DNA of 64,000 bases from Hyaloraphidium curvatum SAG 235-1 (lineage: Eukaryota; Fungi; Monoblepharomycota): NCBI GenBank assembly GCA_025558095.1, contig JAIVFI010000001.1, positions 372,001-436,000 of the forward strand. Direction: 5' to 3'. This document shows, piece by piece, positions 18,761 to 47,772 of this stretch. Both the position numbers and the translations under genes were made by a program. How positions within the stretch are numbered: position 1 is the stretch's first letter; each line of letters begins with the position of its first letter. The notes under the pieces were generated by a model that ran no database searches, was not told the DNA's origin, and saw only the letters and a list, made by a program, of their open reading frames with translations.

Positions 18761-18889
18761 ATCCTGGTCCTGTTTTGCTTGCTACAGCAATAGAGTTTGG
18801 ATACGCAGCATTATGCAATGACACATTGGGAGATGGTGAGCCAGGAAGGAACTTGAAAAAGGCAGCTGCTTCAGCTCCTGCCAGAATCA

Positions 18890-21168
18890 GAATAGTATTG
18901 GTGACCCGGACCTGCCCCTGGCTTGGCCGCCGTTACACCATGAGTTTGCTGCTAATTGCAAATTTCATCGTCGTCGTGTGTCTTTTTCATTTTCCCAGTT
19001 TTCCTGTCCTTCATGGACTTTGAGATGAAGCTGGCAATGGAGTTGAGGGCCTTCTCCTTCTGCCGCCTCGCTTTGATCGTGGGCTCGAACTCCTTGATGC
19101 TAAGAGCCCAGAGCCAGGTCTCCATGTTCCACTCGCGGCCTAGTGCTTCCAATCTAGTCTGCAGCTTCTGGCGCCGCTCGGCATTTGCTGAACAGTGAAA
19201 CAGAAAGTGTTGTTCGTCTCCAATGTGCTCAGGGTCATGCTTGCACGTTCTCTGCTGCACCTCAAGTCCTTGGTGCCTGCCTGTCTCCACCTCCAGGTCG
19301 TGGGTAGAGCACAGCAACTTTTGGACATCCCTCCGGTGCTTCTCCACCCGGATCAGGGATGGTCCGATGTGGCCAAAGGTCATGTCACACATCCTCCAAA
19401 AGTGCAGTTTGTCGTTGTCCTTGAGCCTCTGGGCATTGATCTCCCTGAACTTGCCCTTCACAAGATTCTCCACAGTCTCCTTGGGCCATGAGAAAGTGTC
19501 CTTCTCCCACATCTCCCTCCCATCTTCGCCGCCATAGTATACAAGTAGTTCCCTCAGGAAGGCAGCCCAGTTCCAGGACCCCTTCAGTGCCTCGATCTTG
19601 AGCTCTTTGTAAAGTAGGTACAGCGCAGGATCCGCTGTTTTGATGCGCATGAGGAACTTGAGTGCCGACTCATGGTCATGAACTGCAAGGGGGTACTGGC
19701 CAGTGATCGCATACAGACAGGCCAGGGAGGTAGACTTGGGCAGATGAGTGACGGCACGAAGAGCCATGCATGTCACTTTGTCCCTGGTGCTTTCCCCGGG
19801 AAGGTACTCCTCCTTCGGCATCTCAACAATGAACGTGTTCCCATGTTGGCCCACCGCCTTGACCTTTGTGTTGTAGAGCTTGAGCTGGAGGTCAGGACTC
19901 ATCCCAGGCTGCTCCCTGATGTCACGGAGCCAGAGCCCATAAGCAGCGTTCATCTTGGCCTCTCTGCCATGCACATGGTCCTTGCTCCGGCCGGTTGAGG
20001 TCAGCTGATACCCCAGAAGCTTGAAGCTGTCAACCCTCTTCAGCTCCTGGTCCCTGTACATGAGCTTTACACGGTGAGGTATCCTCCTGGCCATCCACTC
20101 TGTCTTGCTGACGTTGATCTCCAGCCCATTGGCACTGGCATATGCAGACAGAAGATCCAGCTGCATCTTGGCATCCTTCACCGTCTTCGAGATCAAAGTG
20201 GTGTCGTCTGCAAAGAACAGAGCTAGCAAGCTGACCATCCTCTCCTGATCCTCTTCCTCCTCAGACACCATGCCCAGATCCATCCCTTTGGCACCATTGG
20301 CCTCCATGAAAGCAGTGATGTCGTTGATGAACAAGATGAAGAACAGCGATGAGAGAGGGTCCCCCTGCTTCACTCCGGTCAGGAACTTGATGAAGTCTGA
20401 CTTGGTCCCGTCTTCATCCCGGAGCCGTCCCCACACATGCCCGAACGCCATCTCGAACATGTCAACAACCTGTTTGGGTACACCCATCTCCTCCAGCTTC
20501 TGCCATAACCTGGGGCGCTCCACCGTGTCAAAAGCCTTTGTGAAATCTGCAAAGACCATGATCAGCTTCTCCTTGCGTGCCTTGGCCAGGGAGAAGAGTG
20601 CCTCGGCAAGGAACACTGCATGAAGGGTCGATCTCCGTGCACGGAATCCAAACTGCGAGCCTTCCAGCAGCTTGTTGCACTCAGCCCAGGGAACTAGCCG
20701 AGCGTTCCAGACCAGGGAGAAGACCTTCTCCAGCGTCCTCTCTATGCTGATGCCTCGGTAGTTGCCAGCCACGTTCTTGGGCCCCTTCTTGTGCAACATC
20801 ACCAGCAGTGTCTGGCCCCAGTCATCCATCTTGATGCCATTGAGCACGTCGTTGAGGAGGTTGACAACAGCTTGCTTCAGTACTGCAGTCCCGTACTTGA
20901 CGAACTCGAGCCAGATCCCATCCTCGTCCTTTGCCTTGCCGTTGGGGGCCTTCTTCAAGACCCTCTCCAGCTCCTTGAGGGTGATGGGGCGCAGCAGGTC
21001 TCCAGAAGGCGTGATCGTGGCCTTGGGAAGTGGTGGAAACGTGAGCCTTGGATCCTCCTCGATCTTGGTCACGTATTCGGCGCTGGCGACCATCTCCATG
21101 TGGCGCACCAGCTCTGCAAAGGGCACGGGGTTGCCCTTGCGCCTTGCGTGAGCCTTTCCAAGCAGCTG
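18890..21168 (-). mobile_element. 5'-truncated non-LTR retrotransposon (LINE, RTE/RTEX-like) with (TATTC)n tail
   Basis: Uninterrupted RT ORF with short 3' UTR ending CAATACTATTC; no endonuclease region (truncated). Confidence 0.9.
18952..21168 (-). CDS. LINE reverse transcriptase (partial) with C-terminal Zn-binding-like motif
   Basis: KKGPKNVAGNYRGIS, QFGFRARRST, FADFTKAFDTV, GVKQGDPLS, FFADD and STHDLEVETGR...DEQHFLFHC. Confidence 0.92.
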   Translation of the reverse strand, partial: QLLGKAHARRKGNPVPFAELVRHMEMVASAEYVTKIEEDPRLTFPPLPKATITPSGDLLRPITLKELERVLKKAPNGKAKDEDGIWLEFVKYGTAVLKQAVVNLLNDVLNGIKMDDWGQTLLVMLHKKGPKNVAGNYRGISIERTLEKVFSLVWNARLVPWAECNKLLEGSQFGFRARRSTLHAVFLAEALFSLAKARKEKLIMVFADFTKAFDTVERPRLWQKLEEMGVPKQVVDMFEMAFGHVWGRLRDEDGTKSDFIKFLTGVKQGDPLSSLFFILFINDITAFMEANGAKGMDLGMVSEEEEDQERMVSLLALFFADDTTLISKTVKDAKMQLDLLSAYASANGLEINVSKTEWMARRIPHRVKLMYRDQELKRVDSFKLLGYQLTSTGRSKDHVHGREAKMNAAYGLWLRDIREQPGMSPDLQLKLYNTKVKAVGQHGNTFIVEMPKEEYLPGESTRDKVTCMALRAVTHLPKSTSLACLYAITGQYPLAVHDHESALKFLMRIKTADPALYLLYKELKIEALKGSWNWAAFLRELLVYYGGEDGREMWEKDTFSWPKETVENLVKGKFREINAQRLKDNDKLHFWRMCDMTFGHIGPSLIRVEKHRRDVQKLLCSTHDLEVETGRHQGLEVQQRTCKHDPEHIGDEQHFLFHCSANAERRQKLQTRLEALGREWNMETWLWALSIKEFEPTIKARRQKEKALNSIASFISKSMKDRKTGKMKKTHDDDEICN

Positions 21169-21266
21169 GACACACGACGACGATGAACTTTGCAATTAGC
21201 AGCAAACTCATGGTGTAACAGCGGCCAAGCCAGGGGCAGGTCCGGGTCACCAATACTATTCTATTC
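21169..21266 (+). mobile_element. Short 3'-end fragment of the same LINE, inverted
   Basis: Reverse complement of 18890-18981 except 2 substitutions; ends TATTCTATTC. Confidence 0.92.
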
Positions 21267-21289
21267 GTACTCTTTCACAGCGCCTGGAC

Positions 21290-21484
21290 GAATAGAATAG
21301 TATTGGTGACCCGGACCTGCCCCTGGCTTGGCCGCTGTTACACCATGAGTTTGCTGCTAATTGCAAAGTTCATCGTCGTCGTGTGTCTTTTTCATTTTCC
21401 CAGTTTTCCTGTCCTTCATGGACTTTGAGATGAAGCTGGCAATGGAGTTGAGGGCCTTCTCCTTCTGCCGCCTCGCTTTGATCG
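21290..21484 (-). mobile_element. 3'-end fragment (~195 bp) of the same LINE
   Basis: Near-identical direct copy of 18890-19079. Confidence 0.92.
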
Positions 21485-24612: not shown

Positions 24613-24742
24613 CACACGACGACGATGAACTTTGTTAAAAAGACACACGACGACGATGAACTTTGCAATTAGCAGCAAACTCATGGTGTAACAGCGGCCA
24701 AGCCAGGGGCAGGTCCGGGTCACCAATACTATTCTTCTTCTT
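24613..24742 (+). mobile_element. Short LINE 3'-end insertion with internal duplication and CATTCT TSD
   Basis: CACACGACGACGATGAACTTTG occurs twice, followed by the LINE 3' UTR and TATTCTTCTTC tail; CATTCT at 24607-24612 and 24743-24748. Confidence 0.85.
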
Positions 24743-24913
24743 CATTCTGATTCCCGCTGATCTCGGCCGATCCGGGATCAGATCCTGGATCAGGTTTCCC
24801 GGGATAGAAAAGGCCCACCAAATGTACTGCCAAGTAGTCGTCAATCACCGCAGTTCGTCAGTGTTTACATTTGTCCTCGCCGTGCGGAATTTGTCTTCGG
24901 CGGGGTCCGAATC

Positions 24914-25124
24914 TGTTATTGGGGACGGATGGATGTGTTTGGAGTCTCTGGATCGAGTTGGAGTTGATCTTGGCATTGGAGCTGGACTTGGATGGGCGGA
25001 TAGTTTCTGGCTAGCAATTACCTAGGGACGTGGCCTCTTAGAAGGGAATAACGCAACAAACACCAGGAACGCCACCTGCCTCATTCGCACCTGTCTCTGG
25101 GCGCCTGTGACCAGGGGTCTTTGA
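24914..25124 (+). repeat. 5' LTR (TGTT...TTGA)
   Basis: Identical by eye to 31197-31407. Confidence 0.97.
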
Positions 25125-25138
25125 GATTAAGAGTCTCA
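25125..25138 (+). promoter_or_regulatory. Primer-binding site complementary to the tRNA-Lys(CUU) anticodon arm
   Basis: GATTAAGAGTCTCA is the reverse complement of TGAGACTCTTAATC. Confidence 0.85.
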
Positions 25139-25186
25139 ACTGCTCTGACACGTACCTGCTACCCCTGGAAGCCCGCCCGTGACAGG

Positions 25187-26563
25187 ATGACAGCCACCGA
25201 TGCCGACAAGCCCATCCTGCTCAACTCCGGTGAAAACATGGTCCAGTGGGACCGCAAGGCCCCCATCTACCTTAACAAGATTGGAGTGTACGAGTACGTC
25301 GTCAACGACGTCCTCAGCCTCGACTGGCAGCTCGAGCAAGCCCGCAAGAGAGCTGCTGAGCGGAGCACCGGTCCGGGGATGACCGACCAAGAGAAGGCAA
25401 CCATCCTTGCCGAGGAAGAGAAGACCGCGCGTACGATTCTTTCCGACTCCAAGTTTAGGGAGAAGGTCCAAAAGGCCTATGGCGAGCTCATGCTCATGCT
25501 CGACGACGTCCTCCAGGAGGCATTCGACGAGCCCAAGACGGCCCATGACCTCTGGAACGCGATTCACACCAAGTTCCGGGTCGGGAAAGCGCGTTTGGTA
25601 CACGCGTCCCAGATCCGCGTAAACAACTGGCAGTGGGATGCTTCAAAGACGGTGGACCAGAACTTCAACGAGTTGCTTAGTATCAAGTCAGAGAGGGCTG
25701 CGCACAAGAAGCCGCTCACAGACTACGAAGTGGCAATGATGGTGACGTTCTGCAAGGGTTTCCCGTTCGCAGAACTCCAGGGCTACTGGGGACGGGTGAT
25801 TGACGGTGCCAAGCACTTTGATGACAAGGGCAGCAGCAAGACGGATACATTTTCGTTCAACGGCATGCGTGATGCCGCTAACACAGCCCAAGCAAATGCA
25901 CCCCCGGCCGCGCCTGTCAAACTGACAGCTCCCGTTAATATCCCGGTACCTCCTGGATTCGGCCCCGGGTTCGCTGCGTATGGCACCGACTACCAGCAGC
26001 ACCAAGTTCCCCGTGGTGGTGGCAACCCCAGTCGGCCTCCGCAGCGCCCCTGGTACGAGCCCGGTCGCTACGCTCCGTACCCCAGCTACAGGCCGAGCGG
26101 CATGGCTCCTATACCAGGCCAGGGCCATGATACTCGGATGCGCGGCCGCGGGTTGGCACGTGGCGGCATGCGCGGAGGCCGCGGCTACTACCCCGCACTG
26201 AGGCCGATGGGCGGCCCAAGCTACCGCCCGGCTGGCGCTGCCGTTTGGAGGCCGGCTCCGGTGACCAGTGAGATCACCTGCCGCGAATGCGGCAAGCCGG
26301 GGCACGTGGCATCGGCGTGCCCCGACAAAAGGTGCCACAATTGCAACGGCAAGGGGCACGTACAGCGCGAGTGCCCGTCACCGCCCCAGCAGCCGTACGC
26401 CATGCTGGCAGATGCCCAGATGGAACACAGCGAGGGTGAGCATCGGGTGGTGATGTCTGGGCCGAGGTGCCCGCGCCGCGAAGGGGCCGCGGTGCTCGGC
26501 GCTTGGTTGAAGAGGAGGGCCGCGGGCCCCGCGTCGCGAAGGGCCGAGGTGCTAGACGCTTGA
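25187..26563 (+). CDS. gag: Gag (unspliced reading frame) with RGG-rich region and two CCHC zinc knuckles
   Basis: KTAHDLWNAIHTKF copia-gag motif; CRECGKPGHVASAC and CHNCNGKGHVQREC. Confidence 0.9.
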   Translation: MTATDADKPILLNSGENMVQWDRKAPIYLNKIGVYEYVVNDVLSLDWQLEQARKRAAERSTGPGMTDQEKATILAEEEKTARTILSDSKFREKVQKAYGELMLMLDDVLQEAFDEPKTAHDLWNAIHTKFRVGKARLVHASQIRVNNWQWDASKTVDQNFNELLSIKSERAAHKKPLTDYEVAMMVTFCKGFPFAELQGYWGRVIDGAKHFDDKGSSKTDTFSFNGMRDAANTAQANAPPAAPVKLTAPVNIPVPPGFGPGFAAYGTDYQQHQVPRGGGNPSRPPQRPWYEPGRYAPYPSYRPSGMAPIPGQGHDTRMRGRGLARGGMRGGRGYYPALRPMGGPSYRPAGAAVWRPAPVTSEITCRECGKPGHVASACPDKRCHNCNGKGHVQRECPSPPQQPYAMLADAQMEHSEGEHRVVMSGPRCPRREGAAVLGAWLKRRAAGPASRRAEVLDA

Positions 26564-26790
26564 AGAAGGGGGCCGCGGGCCCCGCGTCGCGAAGGGCCGA
26601 GGTGCCAGACGCTTGAGAGGAGGGCCGCGGGCCCAGCGCCGCGAAGGGGCCGCGGGCCCGGCGCGTGGAGTGTGGGCCGCGGGCTCCGCGTCGCGAGGGG
26701 CCGAGGGCCAGACGCTTGAAGAAGAGGGCTGCGGGCCCAGCGCCGCGAAGGGGCCGCGGGCCCGGCGCGTGGAGTGTGGGGCGCGGGTTA
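26458..26790 (+). repeat. GC-rich degenerate tandem repeat (~50-55 bp unit, ~6 copies) inside the copia element
   Basis: Recurring GCTTGAAGAAGGGGGCCGCGGGCCCCGCGTCGCGAAGGGCCGAGGTGCCAGAC and variants. Confidence 0.9.
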
Positions 26791-27225
26791 CTGGGGACCG
26801 ACGGTTGAGGTTCGCGCCCCTCGGCGCGTCGGCACGCGATCGGCTGATCGAACGTGCGTGCCGACGCGGGTGTAGCGCGCGCCCAACAGTCCAAACACTC
26901 TCGGAATTCCTCGCTTGACAAACACTAACTTCCGCCTCTCCTCTTTCGCTATCTAATTTCAATCTGCTTCGTACACTCTTCGTACACTCTCTGTTCATTT
27001 CGGTAAGGCGATACTGCTACCGAAGGTAACTCACCCGCTCCGCACCCAGCTCGCCCTTCATCGCAGCGTTGCCTGACAGCCTTCGGCTTCCTGGGATACG
27101 GCTCAATGCCCGGTGACAGTGAAGGAGCCGATTTCGGCTATGTCGGCTACGACCACGAGTCCGGCGGGGGAGCGACTTATGGCGAAGCTTTCGGAGCAAC
27201 CTACGGCGACGGCTTCGACAACTGA

Positions 27226-30200
27226 CTACGGAGCGGCGGGGAGGCCGCTGCGATCCCAGCCGTGACGGCCAATGCCGTTCCGGGGGAGGCTCTCGACGGC
27301 GGCATGGTTCAAGCTCAACATGCTCGGGCGTACATCAACCATGTCCGGGCAAACACCTGTGATTTCTTCTTCGATTCTGGCGCAAGTCGCATCTCTACGA
27401 ACATCCTCGACGACCTGGACAACGTTCGTTCGATACCCAAGTTCTCGGTGCATGGATTGACCGGACCTGTGGAGGTGTCAAAGGCCGGCACCATGTACAT
27501 TCGCCTCCGCGGTGACGGACCCATTGTTCGCCTTGATAACGTCCTCTTCATGCCAAGCACGCCTTGCCGCCTGTTCTCAGAAACGGCATTGGCCGCCGCC
27601 GGCGTTCGTTCAAAGAACCGCTACCTTGCTGACAAGCAGATGGAGAAGCAGCTGTACCTTGCGGACGGGACGGAGCTGTGCACTCTTTCGCAGCAAAACG
27701 GCGTGTTCCCGATGCCGATCGAGGTCGTCAAGCCGGGGTCAACGTCGCAGGCCATGTGGGGACTCACCGACGCGGATTTAATCCGACTGCGCGGGGTACG
27801 CATGTCACGTCTCTACGACCGTCACCTGTGGCATGCCCGGTGTGCGCACGCTCACATTGAGCGCATCCGGATAGCGCAGAGGTCGGGCGCAGTGCTTGGC
27901 CTTGAGAACGTCGATCTGGGCCCCGAGTCGGAGGTTATCGAGTGCGACGTCTGCCTGCGCGCCAAGCTGACGACTGCGCCGTTCCGCCCTTCGATGCGCG
28001 AGCACGTCAAGGACGTCATGGATCTCTGGCACGTCGATCTCAAGGGACCGGTTGACGTCACATCTGTTCATGGCCACCGCTACTGGATGGATGTCAAGGA
28101 CGAATGGAGCCAGCAGCTCTGGTCGATCCCGCTCGAGACCAAGGATCAAGCAGCGCCACTCCTTCAACAGCTCATTGTGTACGCAGAGACGCAGACGGGC
28201 AAGCGCCTCAAGCACCTCCAGTCTGACCAGGGCACTGAGCTCGGGCGGTGGGACGCAAGGGAGCTTGGCTGGTTCCAGACCTGGCTCCGCAAACGAGGCA
28301 CTCACTTCCGGGTCTCAATAGCCGATACGCCTCAACAGAATGCGGTACCCGAACGCGAGCATCGCTCGCAGGTCGAAGGGGTGCTTGCGCTCTGCATCCA
28401 GGCTGCCGTCGACAAGCGCTTCTGGAACTACGCTCTCGCATACAAGACTGAGGTCCGCAACATGCTTCCAACGGTGAAGACGATGCAACGGGGCGCCAAC
28501 GGAGCGGTCACCACGCCGCATGAGCTGTGGACAGGGACTAAACCCGACCTGTCACGTCTCCGCACGTTCGGGTCAGAGTGCTGGTATGGCATCCTCCCCA
28601 GCCAGCGCAAGGCTCTGGACGACCGTGCACACCGTGCAATCTTCCTCGGTTTCCCGAAGCACCTGAAGGCGTACACCTTGCTGGATCTGACCACAGGCAA
28701 GATTGTCCATGCGCGCTCAGTGGTCTTCAACGAGCGCTACTCTAAACGCTCGCCCGGCTCCTTCCACGAGATTGATGCGCTGGGAAGGCATCGTCCTTTT
28801 GCTCTCGTGCCTCCCCGGTTTCCTCCTTGGCTCTCCAAGCCGGTAGATGCAGCGCCCGATGAAGACAGCGATGACGATCAGCAGACACCACCAAGGGATG
28901 CGGGGACGGACATTCAGGAACCTGCTCAGCGCAACGAGGCCCCAGAGGCGTACGAGTGGGAGCTTCTCGAGGAGGAGATTGAGTATCCTGAGGCTGCGCA
29001 AGGGGAGGGAGCACACGGCAACGATGATGATGATGGGGTGCAATGGCATGCCGAGCACCCTTGGCCAGATGACGGTCTCCAGGACCCCCTTGCCATGCCT
29101 TCGACTGTCACCCCGTTGACATTCTCTCCTCCTTTCCGCTTCCCAGCCTTCGAGACGTGGCGCATACCAGGTACCAGCGCCCCGCACCCGGCGAGCCCAG
29201 TGACACTGCTGTCGGTGCACGATGTCACCGTTCCGCGCACATACAACGAATCGCAGAGATCACCGCATGCGGCTCAGTGGGAGGAAGCGCGGCAGGAGGA
29301 GAACAAGTCGATTCTTGAGATGGGTGTGGTCGAGGAGACGGAACTCCCTGCTGGTGACGAGGACAAGGTGGTGCCCTCGCACTACGTCTACGACGTCAAG
29401 AAGGACCAGAACAACAACGTTACGCGCTTCAAGGCACGCTTGGTGGCGGATGGAAACCGCCAATCCGAGCAAACATACTACGATACGTTCGCTGCCGTTC
29501 CTAACCAAGTCGTTTTCCGCCTCTTCCTTCTTCTTGTTGCCACGCTGGGACTCCTCTGTGATCACTGGGACATCAAGACGGCGTTTCTGCATGCTCCGCT
29601 GGACTACAGTGTCTACATCAGGCCGCCTCCGGGATGGCGGTTCCTCAAGGAGTCTTCCTCGCGCACGGTGCTTCGGCTGCTGAAGAGTCTCTATGGATTA
29701 CGGCAAGCGATGCGCTTGTTCCTTGCAATGCTTGATCATTTCCTTCGCCAGGCTGGATTCGTGAAGCTGGCCTCCGAAAGCTGTCTCTACGTGCGCTTCA
29801 CGGCCGGCCGCTTTATGATCGTCTTTGTCTACGTGGACGACTTACTGGTTGCTGCCACCTCACAGCTGGAGATCGATGAGTTGTTTGCCAGCCTCAAGCA
29901 GCATTTCAACATCAACTCCCTGGGCCCTGTCACTTACTGCTTGGGCGTGCACATCCGTCGCGACACCGGCACCGGTACAATCACGTTGTCGCAGACGGCG
30001 TACATCGACCGCGTCCTCCGCGAATTTGCATTCACGCGTGATGTTCCCAGCAAGGAGACAAAGTCTGCTCTCACGCCAATGCGACCGGATGCCCTCCAGG
30101 GGCTGCGCCCATTCGACCCCGCGGTGTTTGACAGCCTGCCAACGAAGATCCAAGACGACGTCAAAAGTTTCAACTACAAGGGCCTGATTGGCTCTCTACT

Positions 30201-30873
30201 TTGGATTGCCATCACAACGCGACCAGACATTGCTTTTGCGGTTATCTTTCTTTCTCGCTTTGCCAACAGCTTTGGGCCTCTTCACATCAAGGCGCTTCGC
30301 GATGTTTTGCGCTACCTGCGCCGCACCCGTACCTATGGACTTGTTCTTGGTCGTCGTCCTGCGTCTGGTGATCGCTTGGATCTCTGCGCATATGCGGATG
30401 CCGACTTTGCTGGTTGTGTGATGACCCGCAAGTCGACAACCGGTCTTGTCATCCTCATGGGTGCCTCCAGCATTGCCTGGCTGACCAAGAGGCAATCCGT
30501 GGTTGCACAGTCTACTACTGAAGCCGAGTATGTTGCTATGGCTCACGCAGTGCGCAACATCCTCTGGCTCCGCTCCATCTTGCAGGAACTTGGCCTTCCG
30601 CGGACCACACCGACCCGGCTCTTCGAGGACAACAAGTCTGCCGAGCAGCTGGCTCGCGACCCCAAGTTCCATGAGCGGACGAAGCACATCGACATCAAGT
30701 ATCATTTGGTTCGTGACACCGTGCAGGCTGGAGTCATTGAGCCTGCACGGGTTGTGTCTGAGGACAACTTTGGGGACGGCCTCACTAAGCCCCTGCCTCC
30801 GGCCCCTTTTGAACTCTTCCGTGAACGTGTTGGTGTTGTTGATCTGGATCCGGGTTCGGTTTCCAGTGCGTGA
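27226..30873 (+). CDS. pol: Pol polyprotein (PR-IN-RT-RNase H), open from the codon after TGA 27223-27225
   Basis: FFFDSGAS; LWHARCAH...CDVC; HVDLKGP/QSDQGTE/PEREHR; RFKARLVA, WDIKTAFL, YVDDLL; YADADFAG, STTEAEY, RTKHIDIKYH. Confidence 0.97.
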   Translation, partial: LRSGGEAAAIPAVTANAVPGEALDGGMVQAQHARAYINHVRANTCDFFFDSGASRISTNILDDLDNVRSIPKFSVHGLTGPVEVSKAGTMYIRLRGDGPIVRLDNVLFMPSTPCRLFSETALAAAGVRSKNRYLADKQMEKQLYLADGTELCTLSQQNGVFPMPIEVVKPGSTSQAMWGLTDADLIRLRGVRMSRLYDRHLWHARCAHAHIERIRIAQRSGAVLGLENVDLGPESEVIECDVCLRAKLTTAPFRPSMREHVKDVMDLWHVDLKGPVDVTSVHGHRYWMDVKDEWSQQLWSIPLETKDQAAPLLQQLIVYAETQTGKRLKHLQSDQGTELGRWDARELGWFQTWLRKRGTHFRVSIADTPQQNAVPEREHRSQVEGVLALCIQAAVDKRFWNYALAYKTEVRNMLPTVKTMQRGANGAVTTPHELWTGTKPDLSRLRTFGSECWYGILPSQRKALDDRAHRAIFLGFPKHLKAYTLLDLTTGKIVHARSVVFNERYSKRSPGSFHEIDALGRHRPFALVPPRFPPWLSKPVDAAPDEDSDDDQQTPPRDAGTDIQEPAQRNEAPEAYEWELLEEEIEYPEAAQGEGAHGNDDDDGVQWHAEHPWPDDGLQDPLAMPSTVTPLTFSPPFRFPAFETWRIPGTSAPHPASPVTLLSVHDVTVPRTYNESQRSPHAAQWEEARQEENKSILEMGVVEETELPAGDEDKVVPSHYVYDVKKDQNNNVTRFKARLVADGNRQSEQTYYDTFAAVPNQVVFRLFLLLVATLGLLCDHWDIKTAFLHAPLDYSVYIRPPPGWRFLKESSSRTVLRLLKSLYGLRQAMRLFLAMLDHFLRQAGFVKLASESCLYVRFTAGRFMIVFVYVDDLLVAATSQLEIDELFASLKQHFNINSLGPVTYCLGVHIRRDTGTGTITLSQTAYIDRVLREFAFTRDVPSKETKSALTPMRPDALQGLRPFDPAVFDSLPTKIQDDVKSFNYKGLIGSLLWIAITTRPDIAFAVIFLSRFANSFGPLHIKALRDVLRYLRRTRTYGLVLGRRPASGDRLDLCAYADADFAGCVMTRKSTTGLVILMGASSIAWLTKRQSVVAQSTTEAEYVAMAHAVRNILWLRSILQELGLPRTTPTRLFEDNKSAEQLARDPKFHERTKHIDIKYHLVRDTVQAGVIEPARVVSEDNFGDGLTKPLPPAPFELFRERVGVVDLDPGSVSSA

Positions 30874-31185
30874 TGGGCCTGAGGCCAGCGTGCTGCGAGC
30901 TGGACCCTACCAGGAATCTCTGCCCATGATGAGCCGGAGGCTAGTGGGCGGCCATTCCTTGGTTTCTGGGGGAGGATGCTTACCTGTATGTCTTTCTGGG
31001 GGAGCTTTGGATTTTTCTTGTATGTTGTGTTTGTGGGGGAGTTTTCTTTATGTATGGCGATTGGATCGCCCGGTCTTGGGGGGAGGAGTGAGTGAGTGAT
31101 GGGAGCCTGGGTAGGCTACCTGGGGAGCAATCCCGGGGCGTGGAGGAGCATGCGATGGGGGACTCCACTCGATCCACTCGCCTCC

Positions 31186-31196
31186 AAATGGGGGAG
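31186..31196 (+). promoter_or_regulatory. Polypurine tract
   Basis: AAATGGGGGAG abutting the 3' LTR. Confidence 0.85.
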
Positions 31197-31407
31197 TGTT
31201 ATTGGGGACGGATGGATGTGTTTGGAGTCTCTGGATCGAGTTGGAGTTGATCTTGGCATTGGAGCTGGACTTGGATGGGCGGATAGTTTCTGGCTAGCAA
31301 TTACCTAGGGACGTGGCCTCTTAGAAGGGAATAACGCAACAAACACCAGGAACGCCACCTGCCTCATTCGCACCTGTCTCTGGGCGCCTGTGACCAGGGG
31401 TCTTTGA
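31197..31407 (+). repeat. 3' LTR
   Basis: Identical to the 5' LTR; followed by the GAATC TSD. Confidence 0.97.
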
Positions 31408-31599
31408 GAATCCATCAAGTCCGATCCTTCTGAGATGTCCCCCTCGGGAGACAGTCTCCCTCAAGCGAATCTCAAGGTCAAACCCAGGCTACAACTAACT
31501 CTACTTCGGACCTTCCGAGTCCTGTAAGATTGAACCACTTGTGCAGCAGGTTAAAGCGCTAGGCCCGGCTTGACCTGGTCCGGCATACTGTCCCCTGCC

Positions 31600-31905
31600 G
31601 CAACACAGAGCAACGCCAGAAGCTGCAGACTAGACTGGAAGCACTGAGCCGCGAGTGGAACTTGGAGACCTGGCTCTGGACTCTCAGCATCAAGGAGTTC
31701 GAGCCCACGATCAAAGTGAGGCGGCAAAAGGAGAAGGCCCTCAACTCCATTGCCAGCTTCATCTCAAAGTCCATGAAGGACAGAAAACGGGGAAAATGAA
31801 AAAGATGCACGACGACAAACTTCAAATTAGCAGCAAACTTATGGTGTAACGGCGGCCAAGCCAGGGGCAGGTCCGCCGGGTCACCAATACTATTCTATTC
31901 TATTC
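31600..31905 (+). mobile_element. Older 3'-end fragment (~300 bp) of the LINE with (TATTC)3 tail
   Basis: Inverted, moderately diverged copy of ~18890-19190. Confidence 0.9.

Positions 31906-45938: not shown

Positions 45939-47772
<1,834 letters not shown>

What the first reader, a model, noticed from the sequence alone, without database searches (positions are those of the whole stretch)
26436..27079. Phase-compatible spliceosomal intron(s) retained inside the retrotransposon gag gene
Seen: donor G|GTGAGC at 26436 (phase 1, after ...MEHSE); branch-like CACTAAC at 26923-26929; pyrimidine-rich, AG-free tract 26890-27005; acceptor TAAG| at 27007; an 18-nt exon 27008-27025; then a host-style 54-nt intron GTAACT...TGACAG at 27026-27079. 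Both the two-intron path (HSE-GDTATE-AFGFLGY) and the skip path 26436-27079 (HSE-AFGFLGY) restore the frame that leads into pol. Inference: a distal branch point makes splicing inefficient, preserving unspliced genomic RNA. An intron surviving reverse transcription implies selection for packaging of the unspliced form.
Basis: partly seen in the sequence, partly recalled or inferred. Interest (0 to 1): 0.8.

Follow-up and report, generated by a model that had tools for sequence, protein, structure and literature searches.

The report
Copia retrotransposon with intron-split gag
A young copia-type jumping gene in a small, GC-rich, fungus-like genome carries an intron-like 644-base spacer in its coat-protein gene; every copy keeps it, so the element seems to need splicing to make its enzymes while copying itself from unspliced RNA, though no RNA data confirm this yet.

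Summary
Observation confirmed.

Interpretation supported by comparison of copies only. There is no RNA evidence.

- All nine copies in which both flanks matched keep the spacer. No spliced-out copy was found.
- Spacer length varies (636-785 nt; remainder on division by 3 is 0 or 2). So only splicing puts gag in one common frame with the conserved tail and pol.
- The phase-1 donor fits host donors. A branch-like motif and an AG-free tract of 116-166 nt persist although the interior is unalignable between subfamilies.
- Third-position (coding) substitution bias resumes exactly at 27080.
- A divergent subfamily (contigs C15, C2) has the same layout with a different tandem array. Between its donor and second acceptor, the only AGs are at or inside the predicted micro-exon and acceptors.

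Which path is used stays open: two introns with an 18-nt micro-exon, or one 644-nt intron. Reading the 54-nt piece as coding is less likely. The second donor (GTAACT) and first acceptor (AAG) are unlike host sites.

The only public run gave no junctions and may be DNA.

Closest precedent is the plant gypsy element Ogre, so this is a new variant of a known kind.

This scan already reported the same family on other contigs of this genome.

The parts
24909..24913 (+). Target-site duplication GAATC, 5' side (3' copy at 31408-31412)
   Evidence: the same 5 bases flank the element on both sides
24914..25124 (+). 5' LTR (211 bp, TG...GA)
   Evidence: 100% identical to 31197-31407
25187..26435 (+). 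gag exon 1 (416 codons plus the first base of a split codon); two CCHC zinc knuckles near the end
   Evidence: PF00098, 2.2e-9; PF14223, 24.4 bits, below its 27-bit cut-off; differences from other copies by codon position 153/152/318
26436..26441 (+). Donor 1, GTGAGC, phase 1
   Evidence: kept as GTGAG[C/A] in all copies including the 75%-identical C23 copy; identical to a host donor
26436..27007 (+). Candidate intron 1 (572 nt)
   Evidence: 564-713 nt in other copies, length not held to multiples of 3; interior 50-70% identical between subfamilies
26459..26787 (+). GC-rich tandem array inside intron 1 (period 52-53 / 104)
   Evidence: copy number differs between copies; folding no better than shuffles (z -1.84)
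26561..26563 (+). First stop (TGA) in the gag frame if unspliced, 42 codons past the donor
   Evidence: the extension is 24-69 codons in other copies and not conserved
26923..26929 (+). Branch-point-like CACTAAC, 79 nt before acceptor 1
   Evidence: a CTRAY motif at the matching place in other subfamilies (CTGAT at 99 nt, CTGAC at 72 nt)
26890..27005 (+). AG-free, pyrimidine-rich tract
   Evidence: 116-166 nt in all copies; P 0.05 / 0.04 / 0.003 given composition
27004..27007 (+). Acceptor 1, TAAG|, within the conserved CGGTAAG; its TAA closes the tail frame upstream
   Evidence: CGGTAAG also ends both candidate introns in the C15/C2 subfamily
27008..27025 (+). Candidate micro-exon, 18 nt (21 nt in two other subfamilies)
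   Evidence: length always a multiple of 3, always ends GAAG; weakly conserved (61-78%)
27026..27079 (+). Candidate intron 2 (54 nt, GTAACT...CTGACAG), or the 3' end of a single 644-nt intron
   Evidence: always 54 nt in this subfamily, 89-91% identical, differences by codon position 8/8/5 (no coding pattern); 114 and 100 nt with in-frame stops in C15/C2
27080..27222 (+). Gag C-terminal tail exon (A)FGFLGY...DGFDN
   Evidence: differences 13/8/33 by codon position; the four changes in the 27 nt before the first in-frame ATG are all third-position; a 24-nt indel in other copies
27223..27225 (+). In-frame stop TGA (TAA in other subfamilies) followed by CTA, between gag and pol
27226..30873 (+). 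pol frame (protease, integrase, RT, RNase H region), 1215 codons open
   Evidence: PF22936, PF00665, PF25597, PF07727; differences 308/218/992 by codon position
31197..31407 (+). 3' LTR, preceded by a purine tract AAATGGGGGAG

Best explanation
The segment 26436-27079 is spliceosomal intron sequence that this Ty1/copia family has carried for a long time, at one fixed phase-1 position just after the nucleocapsid zinc knuckles.

Proposed mechanism:
- Unspliced RNA can be translated only into a Gag that runs into the intron and stops after a short, non-conserved extension (42 codons here).
- Splicing joins gag to a conserved aromatic/acidic tail. It goes from GTGAGC at 26436 either to TAAG at 27007 with a second splice 27026-27079, or directly to CAG at 27079.
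- The tail ends at an in-frame TGA/TAA followed by CTA.
- Passing that stop gives Gag-Pol.

So the spliced RNA is the messenger for complete Gag and for Pol. The unspliced RNA is the template that is reverse-transcribed, since every new copy keeps the intron.

Shown: the anatomy, its conservation across subfamilies, the coding signature that resumes at the acceptor, and retention of the intron through recent transposition.

Inferred: that splicing occurs, which path it takes, that it is partial, and that unspliced RNA is preferentially packaged.
For: 1. The element is intact and recent. LTRs are identical, the target duplication is GAATC, and gag exon 1 (416 codons) and pol (1215 codons) are open.

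2. The distance from the end of exon 1 to the tail start is 644, 687, 662 (four copies), 636, 660 and 785 nt in nine copies. Remainders on division by 3 are 2, 0, 2, 0, 0, 2, so no fixed translational trick links the frames. The same splice sites restore one frame in all copies.

3. No copy lacks the segment. The segment is found nowhere else in the genome.

4. Conservation is intron-like. The donor and the acceptor block are conserved, while the interior is 50-70% identical between subfamilies. Flanking coding DNA is 87-90% identical.

5. Differences by codon position (first/second/third) are 13/8/33 in the tail and 308/218/992 in pol, against 8/8/5 in the 54-nt piece. The four changes in the first 27 nt after 27080, upstream of any in-frame ATG, are all at third positions.

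6. A CTRAY motif is followed by an AG-free tract of 116-166 nt in all three subfamilies.

7. The divergent C15/C2 subfamily places a phase-1 donor (GTACGT) at the homologous gag position. It is followed by an unrelated 18-nt-unit array, CGGTAAG|, a 21-nt micro-exon ending GAAG, GTGACT, and a 114- or 100-nt second intron with in-frame stops, then a homologous tail.
   - In C15 the only AGs in the 438 nt from donor to second acceptor are the two acceptors and the micro-exon end.
   - That is 0 AG in 301 nt against 7.8 expected (P 4e-5), and 0 in 112 nt against 3.0 expected (P 0.027).

8. Donor GTGAGC matches host donors sampled from actin and HSP70 genes. Those genes have introns of 31-88 nt.

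9. Distant relatives (37% identity or less) are ordinary single-frame gag-pol polyproteins, so the split is specific to this lineage.
Against: - No RNA evidence. The only run holding the sequence is of uncertain kind, is stored as contigs, and showed no joints. One contig from a sister copy crosses the donor unspliced.
- Acceptor 1 is AAG with a branch-like motif 72-99 nt away, and donor 2 (GTAACT) lacks G at +5. Both are unlike the 14 host introns sampled.
- The shuffling P values treat tandem-repeat units as independent, and the tracts are pyrimidine-rich.
- Only the C1 and C43 copies have a clean target duplication. Several copies are broken or rearranged.
- The C15/C2 evidence rests on two old, interrupted copies.
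Confidence: 0.7

Rival explanations
1. The spacer is never spliced. It is a non-coding gap between a gag gene that ends at 26563 and a separate downstream frame. Ribosomes enter that frame by internal entry, re-initiation or non-AUG initiation, for example near the conserved in-frame ATG at 27106.
For: - No junctions were seen in the only run.
- A conserved in-frame Met lies at 27106-27108.
- Acceptor 1 and donor 2 are weak by host standards.
- The plant copia lineage Bianca also has two frames separated by about 172 bp, with no mechanism established (PMC6317226).
Against: - The coding signature starts at 27080, upstream of the ATG. All four changes there are third-position, and FGF.GY is kept even in the C23 copy.
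- The tail frame is closed just upstream by the TAA of GGTAAG in every copy, with no in-frame ATG between.
- This rival would still need passage of the TGA/TAA stop to reach pol.
- It does not explain the conserved phase-1 GTGAG donor, the AG exclusion, or micro-exon lengths held to multiples of 3.
Confidence: 0.13
2. The family is defective for its own Pol expression. The spacer is junk (a minisatellite that grew in a dead gag-pol linker), and the copies are moved in trans by proteins from another element. The intron-like signals are coincidental.
For: - Several copies are truncated, rearranged or carry stops.
- The array varies in copy number like a minisatellite.
- Non-autonomous LTR elements are common (general knowledge).
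Against: - pol, tail and gag show strong third-position bias between subfamilies that differ by 10-13% (308/218/992, 13/8/33, 153/152/318). So these frames have been translated and selected within the family.
- No intron-less close relative that could act as helper was found in the genome.
- The layout recurs with an unrelated array in the C15/C2 subfamily.
Confidence: 0.1
3. The segment is an independent nested insertion (another mobile element) inside gag.
For: It interrupts a frame and contains repeats.
Against: - No duplication or terminal repeats at its ends.
- No copies outside this family.
- Present at the same phase-1 site in every subfamily, including the 75%-identical C23 copy and the C15/C2 lineage.
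- Rfam finds nothing in it.
Confidence: 0.02

Closest known systems
[quoted passage not shown]
   Same: A stop-rich spacer carried in all genomic copies. It is an intron removed from only part of the transcripts so that the whole polyprotein can be translated (PMC6317226 citing Neumann 2003 and Steinbauerova 2008; PMC3735527). The logic proposed here is the same: splicing is needed for Pol, and unspliced RNA is what gets copied.
   Different: - Different superfamily (copia, not gypsy) and host (a fungus-like microbe, not a plant).
- The intron lies inside gag, between the zinc knuckles and the C-terminal tail, rather than after protease.
- It has a tandem array and a possible micro-exon.
- An in-frame stop must also be passed before pol.
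- Splicing of Ogre is shown by experiment; here it is not.
Drosophila copia, barley BARE1 and Arabidopsis Ty1/copia (EVD): alternative splicing that makes a gag-only RNA
   Same: Same superfamily. Splicing is used to set the balance of Gag and Pol, introns are longer than typical host introns, and the unspliced RNA is the genomic RNA (PMC5580714; PMC3735527).
   Different: The direction is reversed. In those elements the unspliced RNA encodes the full Gag-Pol, and splicing removes or frameshifts pol to give Gag alone. Here the unspliced frame stops 42 codons into the spacer, and splicing is needed to reach the tail and pol.
Bianca lineage of plant Ty1/copia
   Same: Copia elements with two frames separated by a spacer of about 172 bp (PMC6317226).
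   Different: No mechanism is reported for Bianca in that paper. No sequence relationship was tested here.
In-frame stop readthrough between gag and pol (gammaretroviruses; Candida Tca2)
   Same: gag and pol share a frame and are separated by one stop, which is followed by a conserved context (CTA) and a hairpin. The comparison with those elements is from my own knowledge, not from a tool.
   Different: Here it is combined with an upstream intron. Readthrough was not tested.

Membership tests
Ty1/copia LTR retrotransposon | Two LTRs flanked by a 5-bp target-site duplication | tested here: met
   LTRs 24914-25124 and 31197-31407 are identical; GAATC lies on both sides
Ty1/copia LTR retrotransposon | pol domain order protease, integrase, then reverse transcriptase (RVT_2 type) | tested here: met
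   Pol_BBD at residues 48-126, rve 266-366, SH3_retrovirus 436-505, RVT_2 712-939 of the pol frame
Ty1/copia LTR retrotransposon | copia-type Gag with a zinc knuckle | tested here: met
   zf-CCHC twice (E 2.2e-9). Retrotran_gag_2 scores 24.4 bits, just under its 27-bit cut-off
Spliceosomal GT-AG intron | GT...AG ends with a donor like the host's | tested here: met
   Holds for intron 1: GTGAGC is identical to a host donor, and 14 of 14 host donors have G at +5. The second donor GTAACT does not fit
Spliceosomal GT-AG intron | Branch-point motif followed by a tract without AG up to the acceptor | tested here: met
   CTRAY motif followed by 116-166 AG-free nt in three subfamilies. In C15 there is no AG in 301 nt or in 112 nt. 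The spacing of 72-99 nt is far above the host's roughly 10-30 nt read from the print-out
Spliceosomal GT-AG intron | Non-coding evolution inside, coding evolution outside, length free of the triplet rule | tested here: met
Spliceosomal GT-AG intron | Actually removed from RNA | tested here: inconclusive
   One run of uncertain kind, stored as contigs, showed no joints. No raw RNA reads were available
Ogre-type obligatory intron (splicing needed to translate the whole polyprotein) | The unspliced frame is closed and splicing restores a frame leading to pol | tested here: met
   The unspliced frame stops after 24-69 codons. The same sites restore the frame in all copies
Ogre-type obligatory intron (splicing needed to translate the whole polyprotein) | Only part of the transcripts is spliced | not testable with these tools
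   Needs RNA data
copia/BARE/EVD-type splicing that yields a gag-only RNA | Unspliced RNA encodes the complete Gag-Pol; splicing removes or frameshifts pol | tested here: not met
   The unspliced gag frame ends at 26563. The spacer length differs in its remainder on division by 3 between copies
Nested transposon insertion | Own target duplication and free-standing copies elsewhere | tested here: not met

The most novel reading that the evidence does not exclude
The intron divides labour between two RNA pools.
- Its conserved 5' part, the tandem array, would be the packaging or dimerisation signal. Only unspliced RNA would then enter particles and be reverse-transcribed.
- Only spliced RNA would be translated into complete Gag and, past the stop, Gag-Pol.

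That would be the retroviral 'packaging signal inside the intron' logic, arising independently in a copia element of an early-diverging fungus. Its coding logic is the reverse of every copia element studied so far.

Hints:
- The array aligns at 94-95% between subfamilies, above the 87-90% of coding DNA, though alignment of repeats inflates this.
- The leader between the LTR and the gag ATG is only 62 nt.
- A second subfamily carries a different array at the same place.
Probability: 0.25. Interest if true: 0.8.

Novelty: new variant of a known kind. Interest (0 to 1): 0.6.

Why it matters
LTR retrotransposons must use one transcript both as messenger and as genome, and must make far more Gag than Pol. 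The known answers are frameshifting, stop readthrough, protein turnover, and splicing that yields a gag-only RNA in copia-type elements. Only Ogre, a plant gypsy element, is known to need splicing to make Pol.

A copia family in a fungus-like microbe that needs splicing and also has to pass a stop would show that the Ogre solution arose more than once. It would also be the reverse of the splicing strategy described as conserved in the copia elements studied so far.

It gives a compact natural system for asking how an intron escapes loss during reverse transcription, and what marks an RNA for packaging rather than translation.

It also matters for annotation: gene finders will mis-call such elements as broken.

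Tried and rejected
- RNA support: the look-up of sequencing runs returned a single run of uncertain kind, and read laying on 24914-30900 gave no joints. This neither supports nor refutes splicing.
- Close relatives outside this genome:
  - The gag word search found nothing.
  - pol found only relatives at 37% identity or less, all single-frame polyproteins.
  - A metagenome scan gave the same result.
  - No exact record exists of the unspliced gag product.
- RNA structure or a known RNA in the spacer: folding of the array (z -1.84) and of the acceptor block (z +0.31) is unremarkable. Rfam found nothing relevant. The bacterial promoter/terminator scan is irrelevant here.
- Alternative acceptor at 27049 (CCCAG|): it is in frame in the window, but the AG is absent in the C24/C37/C31 subfamily, so it is not a family feature.
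- Reading GGTAAG (27002-27007) as a donor: no upstream acceptor is available, and the frame closes.
- A 7-bp hairpin around the micro-exon is not kept in the other subfamily (read by eye from the sequences; no pair count was run).
Exons were searched separately by reference. Only the split codons at the junctions of the micro-exon were read in a script.
- The large representative-protein search, structure prediction and complex prediction were not used. They would not bear on the question.
Full report
**What is there**

The finding lies inside a complete Ty1/copia retrotransposon at 24914-31407.
- Its two 211-bp LTRs (24914-25124 and 31197-31407) are identical, and GAATC flanks both ends. This is therefore a very recent insertion.
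- gag starts at ATG 25187. Pfam finds a copia-type Gag signal just under its cut-off and two CCHC zinc knuckles.
- The frame downstream of 27226 holds protease, integrase and RVT_2 reverse transcriptase in the copia order, and is open for 1215 codons.

**The observation**

- donor G|GTGAGC with GT at 26436, in phase 1 after ...MEHSE
- CACTAAC at 26923-26929
- no AG from 26890 to 27005
- TAAG ending at 27007
- an 18-nt piece at 27008-27025
- a 54-nt GTAACT...TGACAG piece at 27026-27079

If unspliced, the gag frame runs 42 codons into the segment and stops at 26561-26563.

From 27080 the sequence reads (A)FGFLGY...DGFDN in the pol frame. It is separated from pol by one in-frame TGA at 27223-25.

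The segment also holds a GC-rich tandem array of 52/104-nt units at 26459-26787.

**Copies in the same genome**

The assembly has 32 Mb in 55 contigs. Searching exon 1, the spacer and the tail separately gave about a dozen copies.
- In the nine copies where both flanks matched, the distance from the end of exon 1 to the start of the tail is 644, 687, 662 (four copies), 636, 660 and 785 nt.
- No copy lacks the spacer. The spacer occurs nowhere outside this family.
- These lengths leave remainders of 2, 0, 2, 0, 0 and 2 on division by 3. No fixed frameshift or readthrough could link gag to the tail in all copies.
- The same donor and acceptor positions restore one common frame in every copy.

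**Pattern of conservation**

Compared with four other full-length copies:

| Region | Identity to window copy | Differences by codon position (1st/2nd/3rd) |
|---|---|---|
| gag exon 1 | 87-88% | 153/152/318 |
| pol | 89-90% | 308/218/992 |
| tail | 88-91% | 13/8/33 |
| 54-nt piece | 89-91% | 8/8/5 |
| middle of spacer and tract before acceptor 1 (two subfamilies) | 50-70% | none |

- These frames are clearly translated and under selection.
- The four changes in the 27 nt between 27080 and the first in-frame ATG are all at third positions. The coding signal therefore begins at the proposed acceptor, not at that ATG.
- The tail also carries a 24-nt indel.
- The donor GAGG|GTGAG and the block CGGTAAG-(18 or 21 nt)-GAAG|GTAACTCACC...CCTGACAG are kept in all copies. 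This includes an old copy on contig C23 that is about 75% identical.
- The 54-nt piece shows no coding pattern.

**Splice-signal details**

- Each subfamily has a CTRAY motif at the matching place (CTAAC, CTGAT, CTGAC), 72-99 nt before TAAG.
- The tract before TAAG is free of AG for 116-166 nt.
- This is the longest or second-longest AG-free run in each full-length element. Its probability given base composition is 0.05, 0.04 and 0.003.

**A second, independent version**

A divergent subfamily on contigs C15 and C2 has a different gag C-terminus with one zinc knuckle, but the same layout:
- a phase-1 donor (...HGMH G|GTACGT) at the homologous place
- an unrelated array of 18-nt units (12.8 copies)
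- a pyrimidine tract, then ACGGTAAG|
- a 21-nt micro-exon ending GAAG
- GTGACT, then a second spacer of 114 nt (C15) or 100 nt (C2) that contains in-frame stops and ends CCGGTAAG|
- a homologous tail (...AFGYIGYDYD...DGF..), which in C15 runs on to TAA-CTA and the same hairpin; the C2 copy is cut by another insertion before the stop

In C15 the only AG dinucleotides in the 438 nt from the donor to the second acceptor are the two acceptors and the end of the micro-exon.
- That is 0 AG in 301 nt where 7.8 are expected (P 4e-5), and 0 in 112 nt where 3.0 are expected (P 0.027).
- Repeat units are not independent, so the first value is too optimistic.
- The C2 copy, 84% identical, shows the same pattern with one further AG inside the micro-exon.

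This is the strongest argument that the layout is selected as an intron.

**Host introns**

Actin- and HSP70-family genes in the same genome give 14 gaps of 31-88 nt between consecutive matched exons. The signals below were read by eye from the printed sequences.
- Donors are GTGGGT, GTGAGT, GTGCGT, GTGAGC and the like. G is at +5 in 14 of 14 and G at +3 in 13 of 14.
- Branch motifs are CTGAC, CTGAT, CTCAC or CTAAT, mostly about 10-22 nt before the acceptor (about 30 nt in one).
- Acceptors are mostly CAG, one TAG and no AAG.

Against this sample:
- Donor 1 is a perfect host donor, and 54 nt is a typical host length.
- Acceptor 1 (AAG, distant branch motif) and donor 2 (GTAACT) are not host-like.
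- Acceptor 2 (CAG at 27079, with TTCAT 19 nt upstream) looks ordinary.

**Which path**

Three paths keep the frame in the window's subfamily:
- A: two introns with the micro-exon.
- B: one 644-nt intron, 26436-27079.
- D: only 26436-27007 is removed and the 54 nt are translated.

Path D is the least likely. The 54 nt show no coding pattern, and their counterpart in C15/C2 carries stops and changes length by 14 nt.

A and B cannot be separated without RNA. The long AG-free tract favours use of TAAG (A). The quality of the sites favours B.

**RNA evidence**

Only one public run holds the sequence. Its kind is a guess, it is stored as contigs, and it totals 27 million letters.

Laid on 24914-30900 (5987 letters, within the operators' limit), it gave no joints. 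One contig from a sister copy crosses the donor unspliced. This fits either DNA or unspliced RNA and decides nothing.

**Relatives elsewhere**

- gag has no detectable relatives by word search.
- pol finds only relatives at 37% identity or less. All are ordinary single-frame gag-pol polyproteins.
- A metagenome scan gives the same result.
- The split layout is thus known only from this genome.

**Comparison with what is known**

- Ogre is the closest precedent. [quoted passage not shown]
- In Drosophila copia, BARE1 and Arabidopsis copia elements, splicing does the opposite: it produces a gag-only RNA from an element whose unspliced RNA encodes everything (PMC5580714; PMC3735527).
- The plant copia lineage Bianca has two separated frames with no mechanism given.

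The present family is therefore a new variant of a known kind. It has Ogre-like logic in a copia element of a fungus-like microbe. The intron sits inside gag, carries a tandem array and perhaps a micro-exon, and is followed by an in-frame stop.

**Earlier notes of this scan**

Notes s1-701802 and s1-718253 reached the same reading for other copies of this family and name the organism Hyaloraphidium curvatum. I did not check the name. I re-derived the comparative evidence independently. I added the C15/C2 AG-exclusion result, the host-intron comparison and the third frame-compatible path.

**Limits**

Exons were handled separately by reference.
- Several copies are broken or rearranged, and I describe them only.

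**Verdict**

The intron reading is well supported by comparison (about 0.7) but unproven at the RNA level.

Noticed in passing
window 26788-27007 versus contig C30 copy (L027): The window copy and the C30 copy share the 3' half of intron 1 at 98.5% identity, although their flanking gag and pol are only 88-89% identical. This looks like a mosaic, as expected from template switching between co-packaged RNAs.
   Followed up: partly
window 26908-27079: In run X1 a 185-letter contig covers exactly 26908-27079. It ends on the last base of the proposed intron and has sequencing-adapter letters at the other end. Contig ends are not evidence, but the coincidence with the acceptor is unexplained.
   Followed up: no
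window 27223-27260: The stop between gag and pol is TGA or TAA but is always followed by CTA, then a 5-6-bp GC hairpin (GCGGC..GCCGC). The old C23 copy has GTGGC..GCCAC, a change on both sides of one pair. This fits programmed passage of the stop and is the subject of another note (s1-712411).
   Followed up: partly
L025 8780-9008 (contig C15): The divergent subfamily carries a different tandem array (18-nt unit, 12.8 copies) at the same place in its intron. An array of some kind may therefore be the selected feature, rather than its sequence.
   Followed up: partly
window 26459-26787: The array aligns at 94-95% identity between subfamilies, above the 87-90% of coding regions. Alignment of repeats inflates this. 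It may reflect constraint or homogenisation.
   Followed up: no
contig C35 copy (L010) and contig C31 (L032): The C35 copy has an internal deletion that joins the intron array directly to the RT region. C31 holds two copies and an inverted partial copy that shares an LTR.
   Followed up: no
window 18872-21484, 24637-24741, 31608-31901: Pieces of another repeat family, in both orientations, flank the element.
   Followed up: no
window 25125-25186: The leader between the 5' LTR and the gag ATG is only 62 nt and is 92-97% conserved between subfamilies. That leaves little room for packaging signals upstream of gag.
   Followed up: no
window 46189-47726 (contig C1 418189-419726): An actin-family gene with three short introns (47, 55 and 59 nt) lies in the same window. 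It was used here as a sample of host introns.
   Followed up: partly
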